A DNA stretch of 64,000 nt from Vitrella brassicaformis CCMP3155. Taxonomy: Eukaryota; Protista; Chromerida. A model generated the notes under the pieces. That model saw only the letters and a program-made list of their open reading frames with translations. It was not told the origin of the DNA and did no database searches. Below are positions 11,560-21,064 of this stretch, in pieces. Position 1 is the stretch's first letter. Every line of letters starts with the position of its first letter. The position numbers and the translations under genes were made by a program. The stretch spans positions 124,001 through 188,000 of the forward strand of contig CDMY01000376.1 in assembly GCA_001179505.1 (NCBI GenBank), written 5' to 3'.

Positions 11560-14213
11560 TGTGCGCGCTCTGTGTGTGTGCGTCTGTGTGTGTGATCTGC
11601 TTACCACGAAGCTGAGCAGTGATTTCTCGAGCTTGCCCAGCTGTGACGTCAGGTGGTAGCCCTCGGTCGGCCGCAGGGGTGACATCAGCTCGCTCGCCAC
11701 CGCCCTCTCGTGTGCGCGGGACAGAGACAGCCTCCCCCTCTCTCTCTCCCTCTCCCGCCCCGCCTGTAGGCCGATGCTCTGCGACATCTCCATCTCGACG
11801 GCCATGCCCACCGCACGATTCATGCTCTGACAGACGGCAGGCAGGCGTGCATGGGAGATGTCTGCGGGTCTGTGGGTGTGGAGGAATGTGTGTGCGTGGG
11901 CTTGTGCTTACGGCGTGCAGAGGCTGCAGGTATGGCGGCGGTGCGTTGTAGAGTTCGTTGCCGTGCCGACGGAGGTCAAAGTGACCAAAGGCACACCTGA
12001 CACACACACACACAGAGGGAGAGAGCGAGATGAATGGACAAGCATGTCCTCCCCATGTGTGTGTGTGTGTCGTCGTCCGTGCGTACCAGTCGCCGAGTGC
12101 CTGCGTTTCGTATTTGCAGGCCTTGATGAAATTGGTGATCTCGGGGGCACTCGCAGGCAGCCCTACACACAACACAAAGCAGCACCACACACCACAGCAG
12201 GAGTTTGAGCACCACCCATCCCATGTGTGTGCGTGTGTGTCGGCGTACAGATCATGAGGATGACAGGCGCCAGTATGACGCCCATGATCTCCTCGAGGAG
12301 GTATGCCAGGCGGTAGTTGTAGAAGTCGGCGCAGAAGCTGTCCCTCACGGACCGGTGCAGCTTGGCCAGACCCAGGTTGAACCCTCCACCACGGCCGACA
12401 CCATCTGCACACACATACAAACACACACCCAGCAAACAGACACACGGAGAGAGATACAGAAAGAGGTTCAGACGGACGCCGTCCGTGTGACGGACGCAGT
12501 TGCAGGTAGGTACCTACCAGTGGTGGGTCTCCAGGAGGGCGGGAGGTAGTGTGTGTGCTGCACCACCCGCATGGTGGCCAGGTAGGTGGACAGCAAGGAC
12601 GAGTCGGCACTGCTGTCGTCCTGGTGCGTGTGGCTCAAGGCGACCAGGAAACCAAACACCGCCAAGTACCACAGCAAATTCTTCTCAAACACCTGTGTGG
12701 ACAACACACATCACCGCACACACAGGCATCCAGCCATCCCTCCACACTCACTCTCTCTCTCTCTCTCTGCGCTGGGGTGGGATGATTGACCTTACCTTGA
12801 CGAAGAGCAGGGGCGTTTCGTCCCAGAGTGCGATGGCCACCAGCACGGCCAGGAAAGACCCCGCAATGTACTTGACGCACCGCTTCACGCTGTCCTGAGC
12901 CGGCGATTGCCTGAATCCATTCCATGACATGACACACACCGATGTCGTCACTCATGGAATGGTGGATGGGATGGGCGAATCACGTACCATCCCGAGTTGA
13001 CGTACTCCTCGGCTGCTTTCCTGGCCTTCTGCAGCCTCCGTTGGAACTGGTGTGGCAGCTCGTTGAGCTCCCTGAAGGTCCACTCGGCGTACGAGTTGAA
13101 CTCCCGCTTGAAAGGCATGCTCTTGTTGCTCCGGAAATCCTGCACACATGACATGAAGCCAGCCAAGACACAGACGCCCACAGATGGATGGCACACGTGT
13201 GTGTGTGTGTGTGTGTGGATGTGGGTGGCTCAGTGACCTCGGCGTGTCGTAGGAAGAAGTAGATGGTGACGAACAGCAGCACCGGGAACAGCAGGATCAA
13301 GTTCCACAAGGCCATCCAGCGGAACCGATACGACAACCTGACAGACAGACGCCCATGTGGTGTGTTGGTGTGTGAGTGTGTGTGTCTAATGGCGTGATGA
13401 TCTGCCTACCCTACCTGTCTGGGAAGTTGATGCATTCCGGCCGTATGCGGGATCTGCTGTCGAATATCCACTGGAACAAGCAAAACCGGACGTTCCACAG
13501 TAAAGACCTGGACACGACACAAACCCAACCATCACACGGTCCGGTCCCTCCTCTCTCCTCTCGCCCTGCCCTGCCCCCTCGGTCTGGTCTGTCTTATATA
13601 TTCTCACACACATACTTGGTGTACATGAGCCTGGCGGGTATGAATGGCGGCAGGTGTGCCGTCAGCAGGTGGTAGTTGGTCAAAGCAACCAGAAAGTTGT
13701 CCTCACGCAAGATGATGTTCGTGATCTCTGCATTGCCACACACACATGAAGCGGCACACAGGGATGGGAGGGAGGGAGGGACGGAGGGGGGGAGATGTAC
13801 CGAGGGCAGAGAGGTGTTCCTTGACGATGCAGAAGGGCGATATGTCCTGCTGCCGTATCAGCAAGGACAGCACCTCCGGCCAATCCAACGCATTCAGCGC
13901 CTCCTACACACACACAACCAACACACACACAGCATCACGCACACACATGATGAGAGATGACACTCCGGTGTGGTGTGTGTGAGGGGATGATTCCACGCAC
14001 GTCTGAGGGGATTTTGAGTCGATCCCGATAGTAGATTGAGATGTCGTGTGCCTCTTTGAGGTTGTGATAGGACCAGTAGCAGTTGAGGCACCAGAACAGC
14101 ATGAACAGCCCGAAACAACACAACGACAGCACCTTCAACACCGTCATGCTGCAAAGACACACACACACACACACACACAAACGAGTGTGGCGGCCTGTTT
14201 CCCTCTCTCTCTG

Positions 14214-14244
<31 letters not shown>

Positions 14245-14806
14245 GCGTGTGTGTGTGTGTGTGTTTATGATGCTTCCTTCTTACGTAGCGAAGGGTTGTT
14301 GTATGAAGATGGAGACTTCCCTGCAGGTCTCCTCCGAGTCGCACTTGAGCACCGCACCCCAGTTGACGTACACCAGCAGGAAGAACGAAAACACTATCGT
14401 GAACAGCAACGCACTGCAGTCAGGGAGGGAGGGCGATGATCGCACACACACGGAGAGAGAAGAGCGTGCATGTGGGTGCATTGGATCTCTGTGTGTGTGT
14501 GAGAGGCGTACACGAGGTGTGTGACGTGCGATGCGACGATCGAGGCGAACCCCTTCTCCTCGTAATACTTGTAAAACTGAACACACACACACACGCACAC
14601 ACACAATCAATGAACCATTCGACTAAGCTATTGTTGAGTTGTCATGTCATGTCATGTCATGTCATGTCATGAAGGGCTCAGCTCACAGTGGATAGGAATC
14701 TGTCGAGGTCCTGGACGGCATCCCACTGGCGGCTCTGCCGGGGCGGCTCCTCGTGCAGCTCCTCGTACAACCCACCACCATTGCCGACGCCACACAACGA
14801 ATGCAT
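10239..14806 (-). CDS. ATG9: Autophagy-related protein 9 (lipid scramblase)
   Basis: Many exons give the ATG9 hallmarks WDAVQDLDRFLST|FYKYYEEKGFASIV, EITNIILREDNFLVAL, SYRFRWMALWNLILLFPVLLFVTIYFFLRHAE, AEWTFRELNELPHQFQRRL, YRLAYLLEEIMGVILAPVILM, LGDWY|AFGHFDLRRHGN and GKLEKSLLSF, followed by a long low-complexity C-terminus. Confidence 0.92.
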
Positions 14807-15326
14807 CGATACAAACAGACAGACCGACGACGGCTGAGGGCTGACGGGGGGGTTGAGGTGAGGTGGGGTGTCGGGGGTCAGGCGCTACGACACACTCACA
14901 AACGACACACCGATAGTATGGACAGTCACTGCACACACACCAAAACAGCACAGCACGACGAGCGAACACAGGTGATTCCGGTGCGCTCAGAGGCGTCTGC
15001 TGCCCGCTGTGTGTGTCCCTTGTGATCACCGCTCATCCCCCTCTCCCTCTCACCTTCAGTGTGCCGTTCTGCGTCGTCAGCAGGAATTGGTGTTCGCGAA
15101 TCAGGGCTTGTTGAGCGCAGTTTTCACTCTCCTTGTGGTCCAGCTGTCAACTGCACGTGGACGAACGCCTTGTTGTGTCCATCTGACGCCATTCTTCGAC
15201 TTGGGTATCCGATCGCTCAGCTGTAAGCTCGCGCTGGGAGTTGTTGGCGCAGGGCTGCAGGGCTGCAGCGCGAGGACGGTGGTGTGGCGTAGCATCGATT
15301 TTTGAAGCTCTTGTGCGGTACTCGTG

Positions 15327-16300
15327 ATGCAGATCTTCGTCAAGACCCTCACGGTGAGAGGGCGGGGTGCAATGCCTGGTGGGGGGGCGGGGAGGGCTGC
15401 AAAGGGCGCGGGGGGACCTCTGCTGTGCTCTGCTGTGTGTGCAGGGCAAGACTATCACGTTGGATGTGGAGCCCTCCGACACCATCGAAAATGTCAGCTG
15501 TCTGTCTGTGTGTCTGTCTGTCTGACTGCACGGGCAGAAGGCAGGCGGGCATTGACTGGACAGGGCAGCGCTTGTGTGTGTGTGTGTGTGTGTGTGTGTT
15601 GCAGGTGAAGGCAAAGATTCAGGACAAGGAGGGCATCCCGCCCGACCAGCAGAGACTCATCTTCGCTGGTGGGTACAGACCCCACACACACATAGACACA
15701 CGAACACACACACAGAGATGCCCACGGCGCCCTCCCTCCCGTCTCATGCCTTGCTTGTTGTGTGCAGGCAAGCAGTTGGAGGACGGGCGCACGTTGTCTG
15801 ACTACAACATCCAGAAGGAGTCGACGCTCCACCTGGTGCTGCGCCTCCGGGGCGGTGACCTCGTCATGCGTGCCGCGCGACGGGTGCAGCGGGCATGGAG
15901 CGACTTCCACTACTTCGGGGAGCCCTGGACCGGGCTGCACTGGTATGGTAAGTCAAAGACCAACAAAACACAGGCACGGCACACACAGACACCTCCAGGT
16001 CTTTTGGTGGTGGGCAGACCTACACACCGACACATTGACACAGTGGCACCGACACGAATGGTCGTTTCGTTTTCGTTTGCATGTCATGTCATGTTATCAG
16101 GTGTGTACTGCGGGTCGAACATCTACGGCTGGTGGTGGATCCACAACAACTACAGCAAGGACTACGCTGAGACCACCTCCAAGCCCGTCCAGAAGCTCGA
16201 CGGCCGCTGGGCCGAACTCGCGGAAATCAAGAAGAAGGTCGACGAGCGGAACAACGTGGTCCCCGGACAGATCCTGCCCAGCGGCAAGATGAAGGCCTAA
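15327..16300 (+). CDS. Ubiquitin fused to an unrecognised ~96-aa C-terminal extension
   Basis: Exons 15327-15353, 15445-15492, 15605-15668, 15768-15947 and 16101-16300 give a canonical 76-aa ubiquitin ([76 protein letters not shown]). It continues directly into [52 protein letters not shown]...[11 protein letters not shown]. Confidence 0.92.
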
Positions 16301-16587
16301 CCAACAAACTAACTAACACCCAACCAGTGGTCAATAGGTAGGCAGGCCTGTCTTGACAGAGGGGCGGTACACGCGATGGGTGTCTGTTGGGTGTATGTGT
16401 GTGTGTGCAGGGGTGCTTGCTGGCGGGGGTGGGTAGGGTGAGTGGGGTGTGGCGGGTCGTGCGTGTGTTGTGTACGACGTGTTGCCGTAGTGGTGTGGGA
16501 GTGAGTGAGTCACACGGACTCATTCCTTCATTCATTCGTGAGAGCGGCTGCTTTGTATCCCTTCCCCCCCCCCCCCCCCCCCCCCCC

Positions 16588-16887
16588 NNNNNNNNNNNNN
16601 NNNNNNNNNNNNNNNNNNNNNNNNNNNNNNNNNNNNNNNNNNNNNNNNNNNNNNNNNNNNNNNNNNNNNNNNNNNNNNNNNNNNNNNNNNNNNNNNNNNN
16701 NNNNNNNNNNNNNNNNNNNNNNNNNNNNNNNNNNNNNNNNNNNNNNNNNNNNNNNNNNNNNNNNNNNNNNNNNNNNNNNNNNNNNNNNNNNNNNNNNNNN
16801 NNNNNNNNNNNNNNNNNNNNNNNNNNNNNNNNNNNNNNNNNNNNNNNNNNNNNNNNNNNNNNNNNNNNNNNNNNNNNNNNNNNNNNN
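16588..16887. other. Assembly gap (300 N)
   Basis: Run of N preceded by a long C homopolymer. Confidence 0.99.
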
Positions 16888-17081
16888 CCCTCCCTCCCCC
16901 GCCAAGTGTCTGGCTCGTCCGTCTGTCTGTCTGGTTCGTGTGTACTATATGACGACGTGAATGTGTGGCTGCGGGACGGCTGGCGGGCTGGCTGCTGAGT
17001 GAGTGAAGTTTCCCGGCTGTCGAACCCTGGCTGCCTGCCTACCGGCCTCCTTTTTTCACCCAAGTGTCTCTGTCGTGGTGG

Positions 17082-18680: not shown

Positions 18681-19224
18681 TCAGATCTTGTCCTCGGGTG
18701 AGGGGACGTCTGATGGCGTTGTGGAGTTGTTCTTGGACTGGTCGGCGACCTTAGTGCTGCTGTTGCTCTGGGTGAACTTAATGTGGGGATTCACTGCGCC
18801 GGGCTTGGCCTTGCAGAACATGCCGCCGAAGTGGGGCCAGTACTGCAGAAATGGACACGAGACAGAAAAGGCGTCAACATGACAACAAGTGAGACACGAA
18901 TGGCGCGTTCGTTGCGTGTGGATGTACCATGAAAGGCACAGTGAGTGCCATGGCGATGACGCACAGGCCGTGGATCTGGAAAGGGACGTTCGCGTCGACG
19001 TCCTTCATGTACTTGTAGATGAAACCTGTCAGCACCGCGCCCAGGTTGCCACCCTGGAGGAACAATCAACATGTGCAGACATTCAGCTACGAGAGGTGTG
19101 ACTGACGCAGCTTCCGAGTCTTCTCCTGCCTTACCGCGCCGACGAGCGCCGAGACGATGCCAAGGTGCTGGGGCATCATGAAGGGCACAATGCCGTAGCT
19201 AGTGCCCTCAGACGCCTGCACACA

Positions 19225-19259
<35 letters not shown>

Positions 19260-21064
19260 CCCGTACGTGTGCATCTGGAATGGCTGTCGGTGAGCTCCCT
19301 CCCTCACCTGGACGAATAGAGAGAAGATGACGAGGCATGCCATGGCGGCTCCGAACATGGAGCTGCCCTGCAGGCCGAAGGCGACGAGCATGATGCCCTC
19401 GAACAGCAGGCATATGAAGTGAATCCAGAAGCGGCCACGCATCCCGTACTTCTTGAAACAGAAGTCAGACGCAAGCCCGCCCTGCACACCAACGCAAGAC
19501 ACGGCAACACATGACGGCGCGTTCATTACTGCGCTGCGTCAGTGGGGCCACTGACCAGTGATCTGGCGAAGAGGTTCATGAAGCCGAAGGCGCCGGCAGC
19601 GAGACCGGCGAGCTCGATGGGGAGTCCGAAGAAGTCGAAGAAGTAGAGCGCCAGCTGGTTGTTCATCTGCAGCTCAGTCCCGAAGCAAGCCGCATACTGG
19701 AACACCATCAACACGACACGATAATCCCTCAGAGCCCTGCAACAACGAGAACACACACAGACCAACGACGCAGGCAGGAGAGAATGAATTTAAAGCTACG
19801 TCCCTCTCTCCACCCACATCCCTCCCTGCCCCCCTCCCTCCCTCCGTCCTGCCCCTTGGCCACTCACTCGACGTAGTCCCAGAGAGATGTCTTGGCCTTG
19901 CCGAGCATGGATGCGTGGAACTTGCCGTGGGGGGTGTCTTGCGAGAAGAACCACACGCACAGCGAAACGATGATGAAGATGACGCCTGGCACGAGCAGCG
20001 ACACCCTCCACGCCATGTCGCGCGACAAGACAGCCGTGAAGCCCGAAAAGATACCCGCCATCAAGAACTGGGTCACACCACCGCCCAGATTGCCCCATCC
20101 GGCAGCTGCATTCACACAGGACGAAACACACAGACAACAAAAGAGTGAGGTGAGCATGTTCTTGTGTGTCTGTGTGTCCGTCCGTCCGTCCGTCTGCCTG
20201 CCTGCCTGCCTGTCTGCGTCAAGTACCTGTGGCGTTGGCAGTTCCGACGACATTTGGGGCGAACATGAGGGAGCACCAGAACTGGTTGGTCACGAAGGTG
20301 GCTCCAGCACCGCCGATGAAGAAGCGTACGGCGATGAGGCCGGCGCCGTTGTAGATGAAGGCCGCGCACAGTACGGGGATGGCAAAAATGGCCATGTACG
20401 CCGACTGCACGACACGCGGGCCGAACTTCTCGAGTAGGAAGCCGGATGCCACCCGCACACCAATCGTCGATGCAACAGAACTGATGGACGACAACAGGGG
20501 AGACAGACAACCAGACAACAGACATAAGATGTGCATGGCGCCGATGCTTGTATGGGTGCGGTGCTGCCACAACTCACCAGATGTTTGCGTTCTGGATGAC
20601 GTCCTTGCACTTGGGGCCGCACAGAACGCACTCCCGGAATCCGGTTTCATCTGGCGGGCCATATTCGTCACAGATACCGATGGATTCTCGCACGGCCGGC
20701 ATGAGAGGCGCGAATGCAAACCTGAGACAGCCAACACGAGACAGACAGACACACACAAGCAATCACATGCGCACACGTCTCCCTCGAGCAGTGTCTGGTG
20801 GGCGCACCATCCGACGAAGGCGAAGAAGAACGAGATGACCGAGAACCAGAATGCACGGGCATGCGGATTGGTCTTCTTGCTCCTCCCAAAGTTCCTGCGA
20901 GACACATACACATCCACACAAGACCATCAAGACAGATCTGCAGAGATCAGGCTGCATCTCCTTCCCTGCGTTGCTCACCAGATGCGCAGGACGGTGGCCT
21001 TGTCGTTCTCATCGACGGGCCACTCGAACTGGGGCTTGCTCTCCTGGATAGCAGGGGTGGTCAT
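18681..21064 (-). CDS. NRT2: High-affinity nitrate/nitrite transporter (NRT2/NNP family, MFS)
   Basis: Exons give NPHARAFWFSVISFFFAFVGWFAFAPL, LEKFGPR, RFFIGGAGATFVTNQFWCSLMFAPNVVGTANA|AAGWGNLGGG (nitrate signature), QYAACFGTELQMNN, FGFMNLFARSLGG, ASEGTSYGIVPF, GIVSALVGAGGNLGA and YWPHFGGMF. Confidence 0.95.

What the first reader, a model, noticed from the sequence alone, without database searches (positions are those of the whole stretch)
15327..16300. Ubiquitin fused to an unknown 96-aa Trp/Tyr-rich protein (not eL40 or eS31)
Seen: an intact ubiquitin ending LRLRGG is followed in the same exon by [30 protein letters not shown], then by a last exon [22 protein letters not shown]...GKMKA*. 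Known: standard linear fusions are polyubiquitin, Ub-eL40 and Ub-eS31 (basic zinc-finger ribosomal proteins). A few algal lineages have other partners such as actin, ribosomal P1 and Ni-SOD. Deubiquitinases cleave after GG. The tail has no zinc-finger Cys pattern and resembles none of these. Inference: cleavage would release a small protein with an Arg-rich N-terminus, an aromatic ~20-aa possible membrane segment and a charged C-terminus. That profile fits a small organellar (e.g. mitochondrial complex) subunit using ubiquitin as an expression or folding leader. The new N-terminal Asp could also couple it to N-degron turnover.
Basis: partly seen in the sequence, partly recalled or inferred. 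Interest (0 to 1): 0.75.

Follow-up and report, generated by a model that had tools for sequence, protein, structure and literature searches.

The report
Ubiquitin fused to an orphan protein
The alga Vitrella brassicaformis has a well-formed gene that joins one normal ubiquitin to a 96-residue tryptophan/tyrosine-rich protein with no detectable relatives; fusions of ubiquitin to unknown proteins are already known from other algae, and what this tail does remains unknown.

Summary
Window 15327-16300 (+) holds a five-exon gene of Vitrella brassicaformis CCMP3155 with four GT..AG introns. Its product is the public 172-aa record P0001 (CEM07556.1 / A0A0G4F507, "Ubiquitin-like domain-containing protein").

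- **Ubiquitin part:** residues 1-76 are canonical ubiquitin, 75/76 identical to human, ending LRLRGG.
- **Tail:** residues 77-172 are the 96-aa tail, beginning inside the same exon.
- **Real coding sequence:** third-position GC is 0.92 in the tail, 0.44 in intron 4 and about 0.57 in the flanks.
- **Fusion is robust:** no stop follows GG, and intron 4 is 153 nt without a stop, so it survives intron retention.
- **Not a known partner:** the tail is not eL40, eS31, NiSOD or a second ubiquitin.
- **No relatives found:** nothing in Pfam, PDB sequences, two word searches, an exhaustive HMMER search of 1.84 billion proteins, or JGI metagenomes.
- **Mitochondrial-subunit idea:** neither shown nor excluded. 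The tail has a strongly amphipathic Arg-rich N-terminal helix but no classical membrane segment. Published tables show Vitrella lacks a detectable complex II subunit SDH10, and the tail has a DY motif at the same position, but the SDH10 signature is absent.

I class it as a new member of a known kind, of moderate interest.

The parts
15327..15353 (+). Exon 1: start codon and ubiquitin residues 1-9 (MQIFVKTLT). An in-frame TGA lies 24 nt upstream, at 15303-15305.
15354..15444 (+). Intron 1 (91 nt, GTGAGA...CAG, phase 0)
   Evidence: removing it restores the ubiquitin sequence exactly
15445..15492 (+). Exon 2: ubiquitin residues 10-25
15493..15604 (+). Intron 2 (112 nt, GTCAGC...CAG, phase 0), containing a (GT)n run
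15605..15668 (+). Exon 3: ubiquitin residues 26-46 plus the first base of Gly47
15669..15767 (+). Intron 3 (99 nt, GTGGGT...CAG, phase 1)
15768..15856 (+). Exon 4, ubiquitin part: rest of Gly47 to Gly76, ending LRLRGG
15857..15947 (+). Exon 4, tail part: tail residues 1-30 (DLVMR...LHWY) plus the first base of Gly31. It includes the Arg-rich amphipathic helix (tail residues 2-18) and runs on from GG with no stop.
15948..16100 (+). Intron 4 (153 nt, GTAAGT...CAG, phase 1). It is a multiple of three with no in-frame stop. Third-position GC in the retained frame is 0.44, so it is non-coding.
16101..16300 (+). Exon 5: tail residues 31-96, comprising the aromatic core ...[18 protein letters not shown], the DY at tail 51-52, the predicted helix at 66-80 and the stop codon (16298-16300). 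Third-position GC is 0.94.

Best explanation
This is a genuine nuclear gene of Vitrella brassicaformis, and its codon bias suggests it is well expressed. It encodes a ubiquitin-fusion precursor: one canonical ubiquitin followed directly by a 96-residue protein found only in this lineage.

By the general rule for linear ubiquitin fusions, deubiquitinases cut after Gly76. That releases free ubiquitin into the cellular pool, together with one copy of an 11.3 kDa basic (pI 9.3), aromatic-rich protein whose new N-terminus is Asp. Ubiquitin therefore serves as a removable N-terminal leader. It aids expression and folding, couples output 1:1 to ubiquitin, and makes a non-Met N-terminus, as in Ub-eL40, Ub-eS31 and Ub-NiSOD.

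The gene structure, the canonical ubiquitin, the coding signature of the tail and the absence of relatives are shown. The cleavage, the Asp N-terminus and any role of the tail are inferred.

My leading guess for the tail (about 35%) is a small protein acting at a membrane surface, most likely mitochondrial. This rests on an Arg-rich amphipathic N-terminal helix followed by a Trp/Tyr belt. Next most likely (about 25%) is a cytosolic protein kept short-lived through its N-terminal Asp by the Arg/N-degron pathway.
For: - **Gene model:** four GT..AG introns. Three are validated because removing them restores ubiquitin exactly, and every exon translation is found in P0001.
- **Public annotation:** it carries the same 172-aa model on contig CDMY01000376.1. 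That annotation used strand-specific RNA-seq as intron evidence for Augustus (PMC4501334).
- **Ubiquitin:** canonical.
- **Fusion:** no stop or strong alternative exit after GG, and the frame stays open through intron 4.
- **Coding signature:** third-position GC is 0.916 in the tail, 0.867 in ubiquitin, 0.6-0.8 in long open frames elsewhere in the window, 0.44 in intron 4 and about 0.57 in the flanks.
- **Other frames:** other reading frames of the tail DNA hit no Pfam family.
- **Tail has no relatives:**
- **Amphipathic N-terminal helix:** hydrophobic moment 0.96-0.99 over 11 residues and 0.77 over 18. Both AlphaFold runs predict a helix there.
- **Precedent:** ubiquitin fused to unknown proteins in algae, with RNA-seq support (PMC6332867).
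Against: - The exact protein is on record only on the genome contig.
- With no orthologue, purifying selection on the tail cannot be shown; codon bias shows translation, not function.
- Structure predictions of the tail are unreliable (pLDDT 43 or below 50), and the two methods appear to disagree on helix versus strand.
- An N-terminal Asp is atypical for a mitochondrial presequence, and hydropathy does not support a classical membrane helix.
Confidence: 0.6

Rival explanations
1. The tail is the unrecognised Vitrella counterpart of a small myzozoan-specific respiratory-chain subunit. The specific candidate is complex II subunit SDH10 (TGGT1_227920 / PF3D7_1448900), the subunit that carries the DY motif. 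On this reading it is delivered as a ubiquitin fusion.
For: - In the published HMMER table, Vitrella has homologues of eight of the nine Toxoplasma complex II subunits, but none of SDH10 (PMC7987180 S7 Table).
- SDH10 evolves very fast: Toxoplasma against P. berghei gives E 1.5e-4, against Perkinsus 0.055, and nothing against Babesia.
- PfSDH10 is 75 aa with its DY at 52-53. The tail's only DY is at 51-52, which is the same place once the missing Met is counted.
- The size fits: 9-11 kDa for these subunits, 11.3 kDa for the tail.
- MPODD, another small subunit of this complex, is an integral membrane protein although some transmembrane predictors (including CCTOP) find no membrane segment in it (PMC11285852).
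Against: - The signature shared by Toxoplasma (RKEWADICLDYCYSKR) and Plasmodium (RRKEWADIMLDYVHHKRC) is absent. There is no match even with 4 substitutions, and BLASTP finds no alignment at E<=100.
- A DY occurs in 28% of shuffled tails. Its position match (1.9%) was noticed after the fact.
- TgSDH10 has no predicted presequence, whereas the tail has an Arg-rich N-terminal helix.
- No hit to any PDB chain.
- MPODD and SDH11 are excluded, because other Vitrella proteins fill those places.
Confidence: 0.1
2. The gene exists mainly to supply ubiquitin. The tail is a disposable C-terminal cap, like the extra residues that end polyubiquitin genes. After cleavage it is destroyed through its destabilising N-terminal Asp and has no function of its own.
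For: - The ubiquitin is perfectly canonical.
- The tail has no relatives in 1.84 billion proteins and no confident fold.
- N-terminal Asp is a secondary destabilising residue in the Arg/N-degron pathway (established knowledge).
- Ubiquitin monomers with unexplained extensions are listed for B. natans and G. theta.
Against: - A 96-codon useless extension in a strongly codon-biased gene would be costly, and a single stop mutation would remove it.
- The tail's codon bias is as strong as ubiquitin's or stronger (0.916 against 0.867).
- Its composition is peculiar (7 Trp, 6 Tyr) and organised into helix, aromatic core and helix, rather than random.
Confidence: 0.15
3. Gene-model artefact. Ubiquitin and the tail are not made as one polypeptide, because transcripts use another splice or polyadenylation site, or because the locus is not expressed.
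For: - No RNA was examined here.
- The model comes from an automated Augustus annotation.
- A GT at 15855 lies in the same phase as the real donor.
- An assembly gap lies about 290 nt downstream of the stop.
Against: - There is no stop after GG, and the frame is open through intron 4, so any transcript containing exon 4 encodes ubiquitin plus tail.
- Even the alternative GT at 15855 would keep ubiquitin fused in frame to the last exon.
- The strong frame-specific GC3 of both tail exons, against 0.44 in intron 4, fits exactly the annotated splice.
- The donor GTAAGT and acceptor CAG are consensus.
Confidence: 0.1

Closest known systems
Ubiquitin fused to 'hypothetical proteins' in Bigelowiella natans (e.g. 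AAP34639, 200 aa, one N-terminal ubiquitin) and Guillardia theta (PMC6332867)
   Same: A single N-terminal ubiquitin is followed in frame by a short polypeptide with no detectable similarity to known proteins, in a secondary-plastid alga.
   Different: The lineage differs (chromerid alveolate). The tail is unrelated to any protein in the searched libraries, so it is an independent fusion. Expression was shown by RNA-seq for those cases but not checked here.
Ub-eL40 and Ub-eS31 ribosomal fusion precursors
   Same: Same architecture (one ubiquitin, then a small basic protein), and presumably the same processing after Gly76 and the same leader/chaperone logic.
   Different: The tail has no Ribosomal_L40e or Ribosomal_S27 Pfam match even at E<=10, has one Cys rather than a C4 zinc site, is 96 aa, and is aromatic-rich rather than Lys/Arg-rich.
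Ub-NiSOD fusions of marine algae
   Same: A non-ribosomal partner, where cleavage by deubiquitinases creates a defined non-Met N-terminus.
   Different: There is no Sod_Ni match and no N-terminal His-Cys Ni-hook; the tail starts DLVMR. No functional need for an N-terminal Asp is known.
Myzozoan-specific small complex II subunits (SDH10, SDH11, MPODD)
   Same: About 9-11 kDa, lineage-restricted, fast-evolving and only mildly hydrophobic. SDH10 has a DY at the same distance from the N-terminus.
   Different: There is no sequence similarity, and the SDH10 signature KEWADI.LDY is absent. MPODD and SDH11 have other Vitrella homologues. None of these is reported as a ubiquitin fusion.

Membership tests
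Canonical ubiquitin (Pfam PF00240) as a precursor moiety | Full-length 76-residue ubiquitin fold match | tested here: met
   PF00240 at E 1.8e-33, covering residues 3-74 on model positions 1-72 of 72; 75/76 identical to human ubiquitin.
Canonical ubiquitin (Pfam PF00240) as a precursor moiety | C-terminal LRLRGG and all seven lysines (K6, 11, 27, 29, 33, 48, 63) | tested here: met
   Read directly from P0001; the only difference from human is E16D.
Canonical ubiquitin (Pfam PF00240) as a precursor moiety | Cleavage after Gly76 by deubiquitinases | not testable with these tools
   Inferred from the general rule that Ub-X bonds are cut unless X is Pro; here X is Asp.
Ub-eL40 fusion | Tail matches Ribosomal_L40e and is about 52 aa with a zinc-binding Cys pattern | tested here: not met
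   No Pfam hit at E<=10; 96 aa with one Cys.
Ub-eS31 (S27a) fusion | Tail matches Ribosomal_S27 with a C4 zinc ribbon | tested here: not met
   No Pfam hit at E<=10; one Cys.
Polyubiquitin | Further head-to-tail ubiquitin units after the first | tested here: not met
   tblastn of ubiquitin against the window finds only the one split copy at 15327-15856. Other frames of the tail DNA hit no Pfam family.
Ub-NiSOD fusion | Tail matches Sod_Ni and begins with the His-Cys Ni-hook | tested here: not met
   No Pfam hit; the tail begins DLVMR.
Non-ribosomal N-terminal ubiquitin fusions of algae with an unknown partner (PMC6332867) | One N-terminal ubiquitin joined in frame to a polypeptide without detectable homologues | tested here: met
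Non-ribosomal N-terminal ubiquitin fusions of algae with an unknown partner (PMC6332867) | Fusion present in transcripts | not testable with these tools
There is only indirect support: the public model came from an RNA-seq-guided annotation.
Myzozoan complex II subunit SDH10 | Conserved KEWADI.LDY-type block around the DY motif | tested here: not met
   DY is present at tail 51-52, but the block is not matched with up to 4 substitutions. BLASTP against the Pf fragment gives no alignment at E<=100.
Myzozoan complex II subunit SDH10 | Co-migration or co-purification with SDHB | not testable with these tools
   Needs Vitrella biochemistry.
MPODD (complex II) | Being the Vitrella homologue found with TgMPODD | tested here: not met
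   Published hit is A0A0G4EQ94 / Vbra_1532 (E 1.2e-14), a different protein from A0A0G4F507.
MORN repeat | Y.G.[WFY]..[GND]...G.G repeat core | tested here: not met
   No match even with 2 substitutions; no Pfam MORN hit. The consensus was recalled from memory.

The most novel reading that the evidence does not exclude
Vitrella makes a small mitochondrial respiratory-chain subunit as a ubiquitin fusion. The most specific version is that the tail is the missing quinone-site subunit SDH10 of complex II, carrying the DY motif. That would be the first case of ubiquitin serving as the removable leader of an organellar membrane protein, with mitochondrial import competing against N-degron destruction of copies that are not imported.
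Probability: 0.1. Interest if true: 0.75.

Novelty: new member of a known kind. Interest (0 to 1): 0.42.

Why it matters
Natural linear ubiquitin fusions are few, and each has revealed why a cell wants a removable ubiquitin leader: ribosome assembly for eL40 and eS31, and a precise N-terminus for NiSOD.

This chromerid example pairs a perfect ubiquitin with a partner found in no other sequenced organism. It adds to the evidence that algae with complex plastids invent such fusions repeatedly.

It is also a natural 'Ub-Asp-X' construct, the design used in the laboratory to make short-lived proteins. It could therefore show whether cells use the ubiquitin-fusion route to set a protein's half-life.

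If the tail proved to be a mitochondrial subunit, it would also help fill the gaps in the divergent respiratory complexes of apicomplexan relatives. None of this is established: the tail's function is unknown and the gene is already in public annotation, so the present value is moderate.

Tried and rejected
- **Pfam on the pieces.** I scanned each tail exon, the read-through stretch and the spliced tail. The only hit was a sub-threshold RIMB1_N match (E 0.1-0.24), which I take as noise.
- **PDB sequence search.** Two chance hits (E 0.41 and 2.6).
- **Word searches.** One sized for fused relatives and one for unfused relatives found only the protein itself, or nothing.
- **Exhaustive HMMER search.** It found itself plus P0002, a 1093-aa fungal-type NACHT/TPR protein. 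That hit is a 26-residue match to a six-fold repeated TPR unit, GRWAEAEELEVKV..., so I rejected it as repeat-inflated chance.
- **JGI metagenomes.** 503 pattern matches, none confirmed by tblastn.
- **ESM Atlas.** No feature hits, and structural matches at TM 0.36-0.53 to unrelated proteins.
- **AlphaFold.** The whole protein and the tail alone gave tail pLDDT below 50, so I ran no fold search on them.
- **Other reading frames of the tail DNA.** No domain, so the tail is not a frame-shifted known gene.
- **MORN-like look of [13 protein letters not shown] Rejected.
- **MPODD, SDH11 and SDH10 identities.** Tested through published tables and peptides. The first two are excluded and the third is unsupported.
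- **eS30-like 'NVVP' near the C-terminus.** I noticed a resemblance to the eS30 C-terminal sequence as I recall it. No Ribosomal_S30 Pfam hit, so I dropped it.
- **IQ-motif look of RRVQRAW.** By eye, the Arg-Gly positions are Ser-Asp, and there is no Pfam IQ hit.
- **Literature.** Searches for the accession numbers found nothing.
- **Exact-protein look-up.** It found only the genome contig and no transcript assembly.

Full report
**What is in the sequence**

Reading window 14700-17000 and translating exon by exon by reference gives a five-exon gene on the + strand.
- The exons are 15327-15353, 15445-15492, 15605-15668, 15768-15947 and 16101-16300.
- The four introns are 91, 112, 99 and 153 nt. 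They begin GTGAGA, GTCAGC, GTGGGT and GTAAGT, and all end in CAG.
- The first three introns interrupt ubiquitin, and removing them restores its sequence exactly. This validates the local splicing rules.
- Exon 4 runs from ubiquitin Gly47/Lys48 through LRLRGG straight into [30 protein letters not shown]. The last exon supplies the rest of Gly31 and [12 protein letters not shown]...GKMKA, then the stop.
- An in-frame TGA lies 24 nt upstream of the ATG.

**How the spliced product was handled**

I searched the model exon by exon and as a contiguous read-through stretch, always by reference. I made no hand-joined sequence.

The word search returned the public protein P0001: 172 aa, CEM07556.1, UniProt A0A0G4F507, 'Ubiquitin-like domain-containing protein', Vitrella brassicaformis CCMP3155. 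Every exon translation is an exact substring of it. From then on I used P0001:77-172 as the reference for the tail.

The gene lies on contig CDMY01000376.1 of assembly GCA_001179505.1. It sits between an ATG9 gene and an MFS transporter gene, both on the other strand.

The only typed letters I sent to tools were short: a 22-residue fragment of PF3D7_1448900 quoted in a paper's supplement and a 10-residue motif pattern.

**Is the tail really coding?**

Third-codon-position GC compares as follows:

| Region | Third-position GC |
|---|---|
| Tail part of exon 4 | 0.87 |
| Exon 5 | 0.94 |
| Whole tail | 87/95 = 0.916 |
| Ubiquitin part | 0.867 |
| Long open frames elsewhere in the window | about 0.6-0.8 |
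| Intron 4, read in the retained frame | 0.44 |
| Flanks | about 0.57 |

- The binomial probability of the tail value against a 0.58 background is 3.5e-13.
- Second positions in exon 5 are 0.38, so the three-base periodicity is strong.
- This is the signature of a long-standing, efficiently translated reading frame. It places the coding/non-coding boundary exactly at the annotated splice sites.
- The fusion does not depend on intron 4. No stop follows GG, and the 153-nt intron is open in frame, so any transcript containing exon 4 encodes ubiquitin plus tail.

**The ubiquitin**

- It matches Pfam PF00240 end to end at 1.8e-33.
- It is 75/76 identical to human ubiquitin, with E16D the only change.
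- All seven lysines and LRLRGG are present.
- It is a working ubiquitin, not a degenerate ubiquitin-like domain.

**The tail**

The tail is 96 aa, 11.3 kDa, pI 9.3 and net charge +4, with 7 Trp, 6 Tyr and 1 Cys.

It has no Pfam match, even at E<=10. It is therefore not eL40, eS31, NiSOD, P1/P2 or any other catalogued domain. Other frames of the same DNA also match nothing, and there is no second ubiquitin unit.

The searches for relatives found nothing:
- PDB sequences: only chance hits.
- Word searches sized for fused relatives and unfused relatives: nothing.
- ESM Atlas: nothing.
- JGI metagenomes: nothing.
- Exhaustive HMMER search of 1.84 billion representatives: itself plus one repeat-inflated match to a TPR array.

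A limit applies. With that library size, about 35 bits are needed to be listed, so a very divergent orthologue of a 96-residue protein could escape.

**Shape of the tail**

- Residues 1-18 form a strongly amphipathic, Arg-rich helix. The hydrophobic moment is 0.96-0.99 over 11 residues and 0.77 over 18. Both AlphaFold runs predict a helix there.
- Residues about 17-45 are the aromatic core.
  - The best 19-residue Kyte-Doolittle mean is only 0.15, far below a classical membrane helix.
  - The Wimley-White octanol sum is -6.2 kcal/mol because of the Trp content.
  - AlphaFold draws three beta-strands here (pLDDT about 50 or less). The ESM Atlas model's nearest structural matches for this stretch include segments of membrane proteins. 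Neither model can be trusted.
- Residues 66-80 are a charged helix.

**The mitochondrial-subunit idea**

Small myzozoan-specific subunits of complex II look broadly like the tail. They are 9-11 kDa, fast-evolving and weakly hydrophobic. MPODD is experimentally an integral membrane protein, yet some transmembrane predictors find no membrane segment in it (PMC11285852; PMC10735183).

The published HMMER table (PMC7987180 S7) gives Vitrella homologues for SDHA, SDHB, SDH31, SDH15, MPODD (A0A0G4EQ94 = Vbra_1532), SDH11, SDH23 and SDH18. It gives none for SDH10. PfSDH10 is 75 aa with its functional DY motif at 52-53 (PMC8217502), and the tail's only DY is at 51-52.

The test fails, however:
- Toxoplasma peptides (RKEWADICLDYCYSKR) and the Plasmodium sequence (RRKEWADIMLDYVHHKRC) share a strict block around the DY.
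- The tail does not match that block even with four substitutions.
- BLASTP finds no alignment.
- A DY occurs in 28% of shuffled tails.

MPODD and SDH11 are excluded because other Vitrella proteins hold those places. The tail's accession also does not occur in the held supplementary files of PMC8217502, which list the Vitrella orthologues of complexes III and IV.

The mitochondrial reading therefore remains a possibility resting on general features, not on a demonstrated relationship.

**How it most likely works**

- Shown: a canonical ubiquitin is fused in frame to a translated, codon-optimised orphan sequence.
- Inferred from established knowledge: deubiquitinases cut Ub-X bonds for any X except Pro. 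The precursor should therefore yield free ubiquitin plus the tail with N-terminal Asp.
- N-terminal Asp is a secondary destabilising residue of the Arg/N-degron pathway. The tail could therefore be short-lived unless its N-terminus is quickly buried, modified or imported.
- Whether Vitrella has the arginyltransferase was not tested.

**Comparison with what is known**

[quoted passage not shown] The authors of that study suggested such fusions may be more common than previously thought and may be overlooked by automated annotation (PMC6332867).

Unchecked notes from this scan mention other odd ubiquitin fusions in the same genome. This gene is therefore a new, independent member of a known kind. 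I found no literature on it.

**What could not be done**

- The only indirect support is that the identical public model came from an annotation that used strand-specific RNA-seq as intron evidence (PMC4501334).

**Verdict**

The gene is real with high probability, its partner is a true orphan, and its function is unresolved. It is a new member of a known kind, with interest of about 0.4.

Noticed in passing
window 15948-16100: Intron 4 is 153 nt (a multiple of 3) with no in-frame stop. Retaining it would insert 51 residues without breaking the ubiquitin-tail frame. The whole stretch 15302-16300 is listed as one 332-aa open frame.
   Followed up: partly
window 15855-15856: A GT inside the Gly76 codon (GCG|GTGACC) lies in the same phase as the real donor at 15948. 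If used with the acceptor at 16100, it would join ubiquitin directly to [12 protein letters not shown]..., skipping the Arg-rich helix. There is no evidence that it is used.
   Followed up: no
window 16565-16920: A poly-C run is followed by an assembly gap of about 300 N (16589-16887). This starts about 265-290 nt downstream of the stop codon, so the 3' UTR of the gene may be incomplete in the assembly.
   Followed up: no
window 12327-14806 (-) and 18681-19300 (-); L001 1-2480 and 6355-6974: The neighbouring called genes are an ATG9 homologue (966 aa product) upstream and an MFS_1 transporter (510 aa product) downstream. Both are on the opposite strand and both run beyond the fetched locus.
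   Followed up: no
window 15669-15767 and 15948-16100: Introns 3 and 4 are CA-rich in their 5' halves (A+C 0.76 and 0.62) and carry TG/GT dinucleotides towards the 3' end, in line with the scan's note on polarised introns. Introns 1 and 2 are TG-rich throughout and do not fit.
   Followed up: partly
literature, not the window (PMC7987180 S7 Table): Vitrella has detectable homologues of eight of the nine Toxoplasma complex II subunits. It has none of SDH10 (TGGT1_227920), so its quinone-site DY subunit is still unidentified.
   Followed up: partly
P0002 residues about 790-1030: The only non-self HMMER hit is a 1093-aa NACHT/TPR-type protein. Its six near-identical TPR units (…GRWAEAEELEVKVMETRRTVLGEAHP…) each resemble tail residues 65-90. 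I judge this a repeat-inflated chance match.
   Followed up: yes
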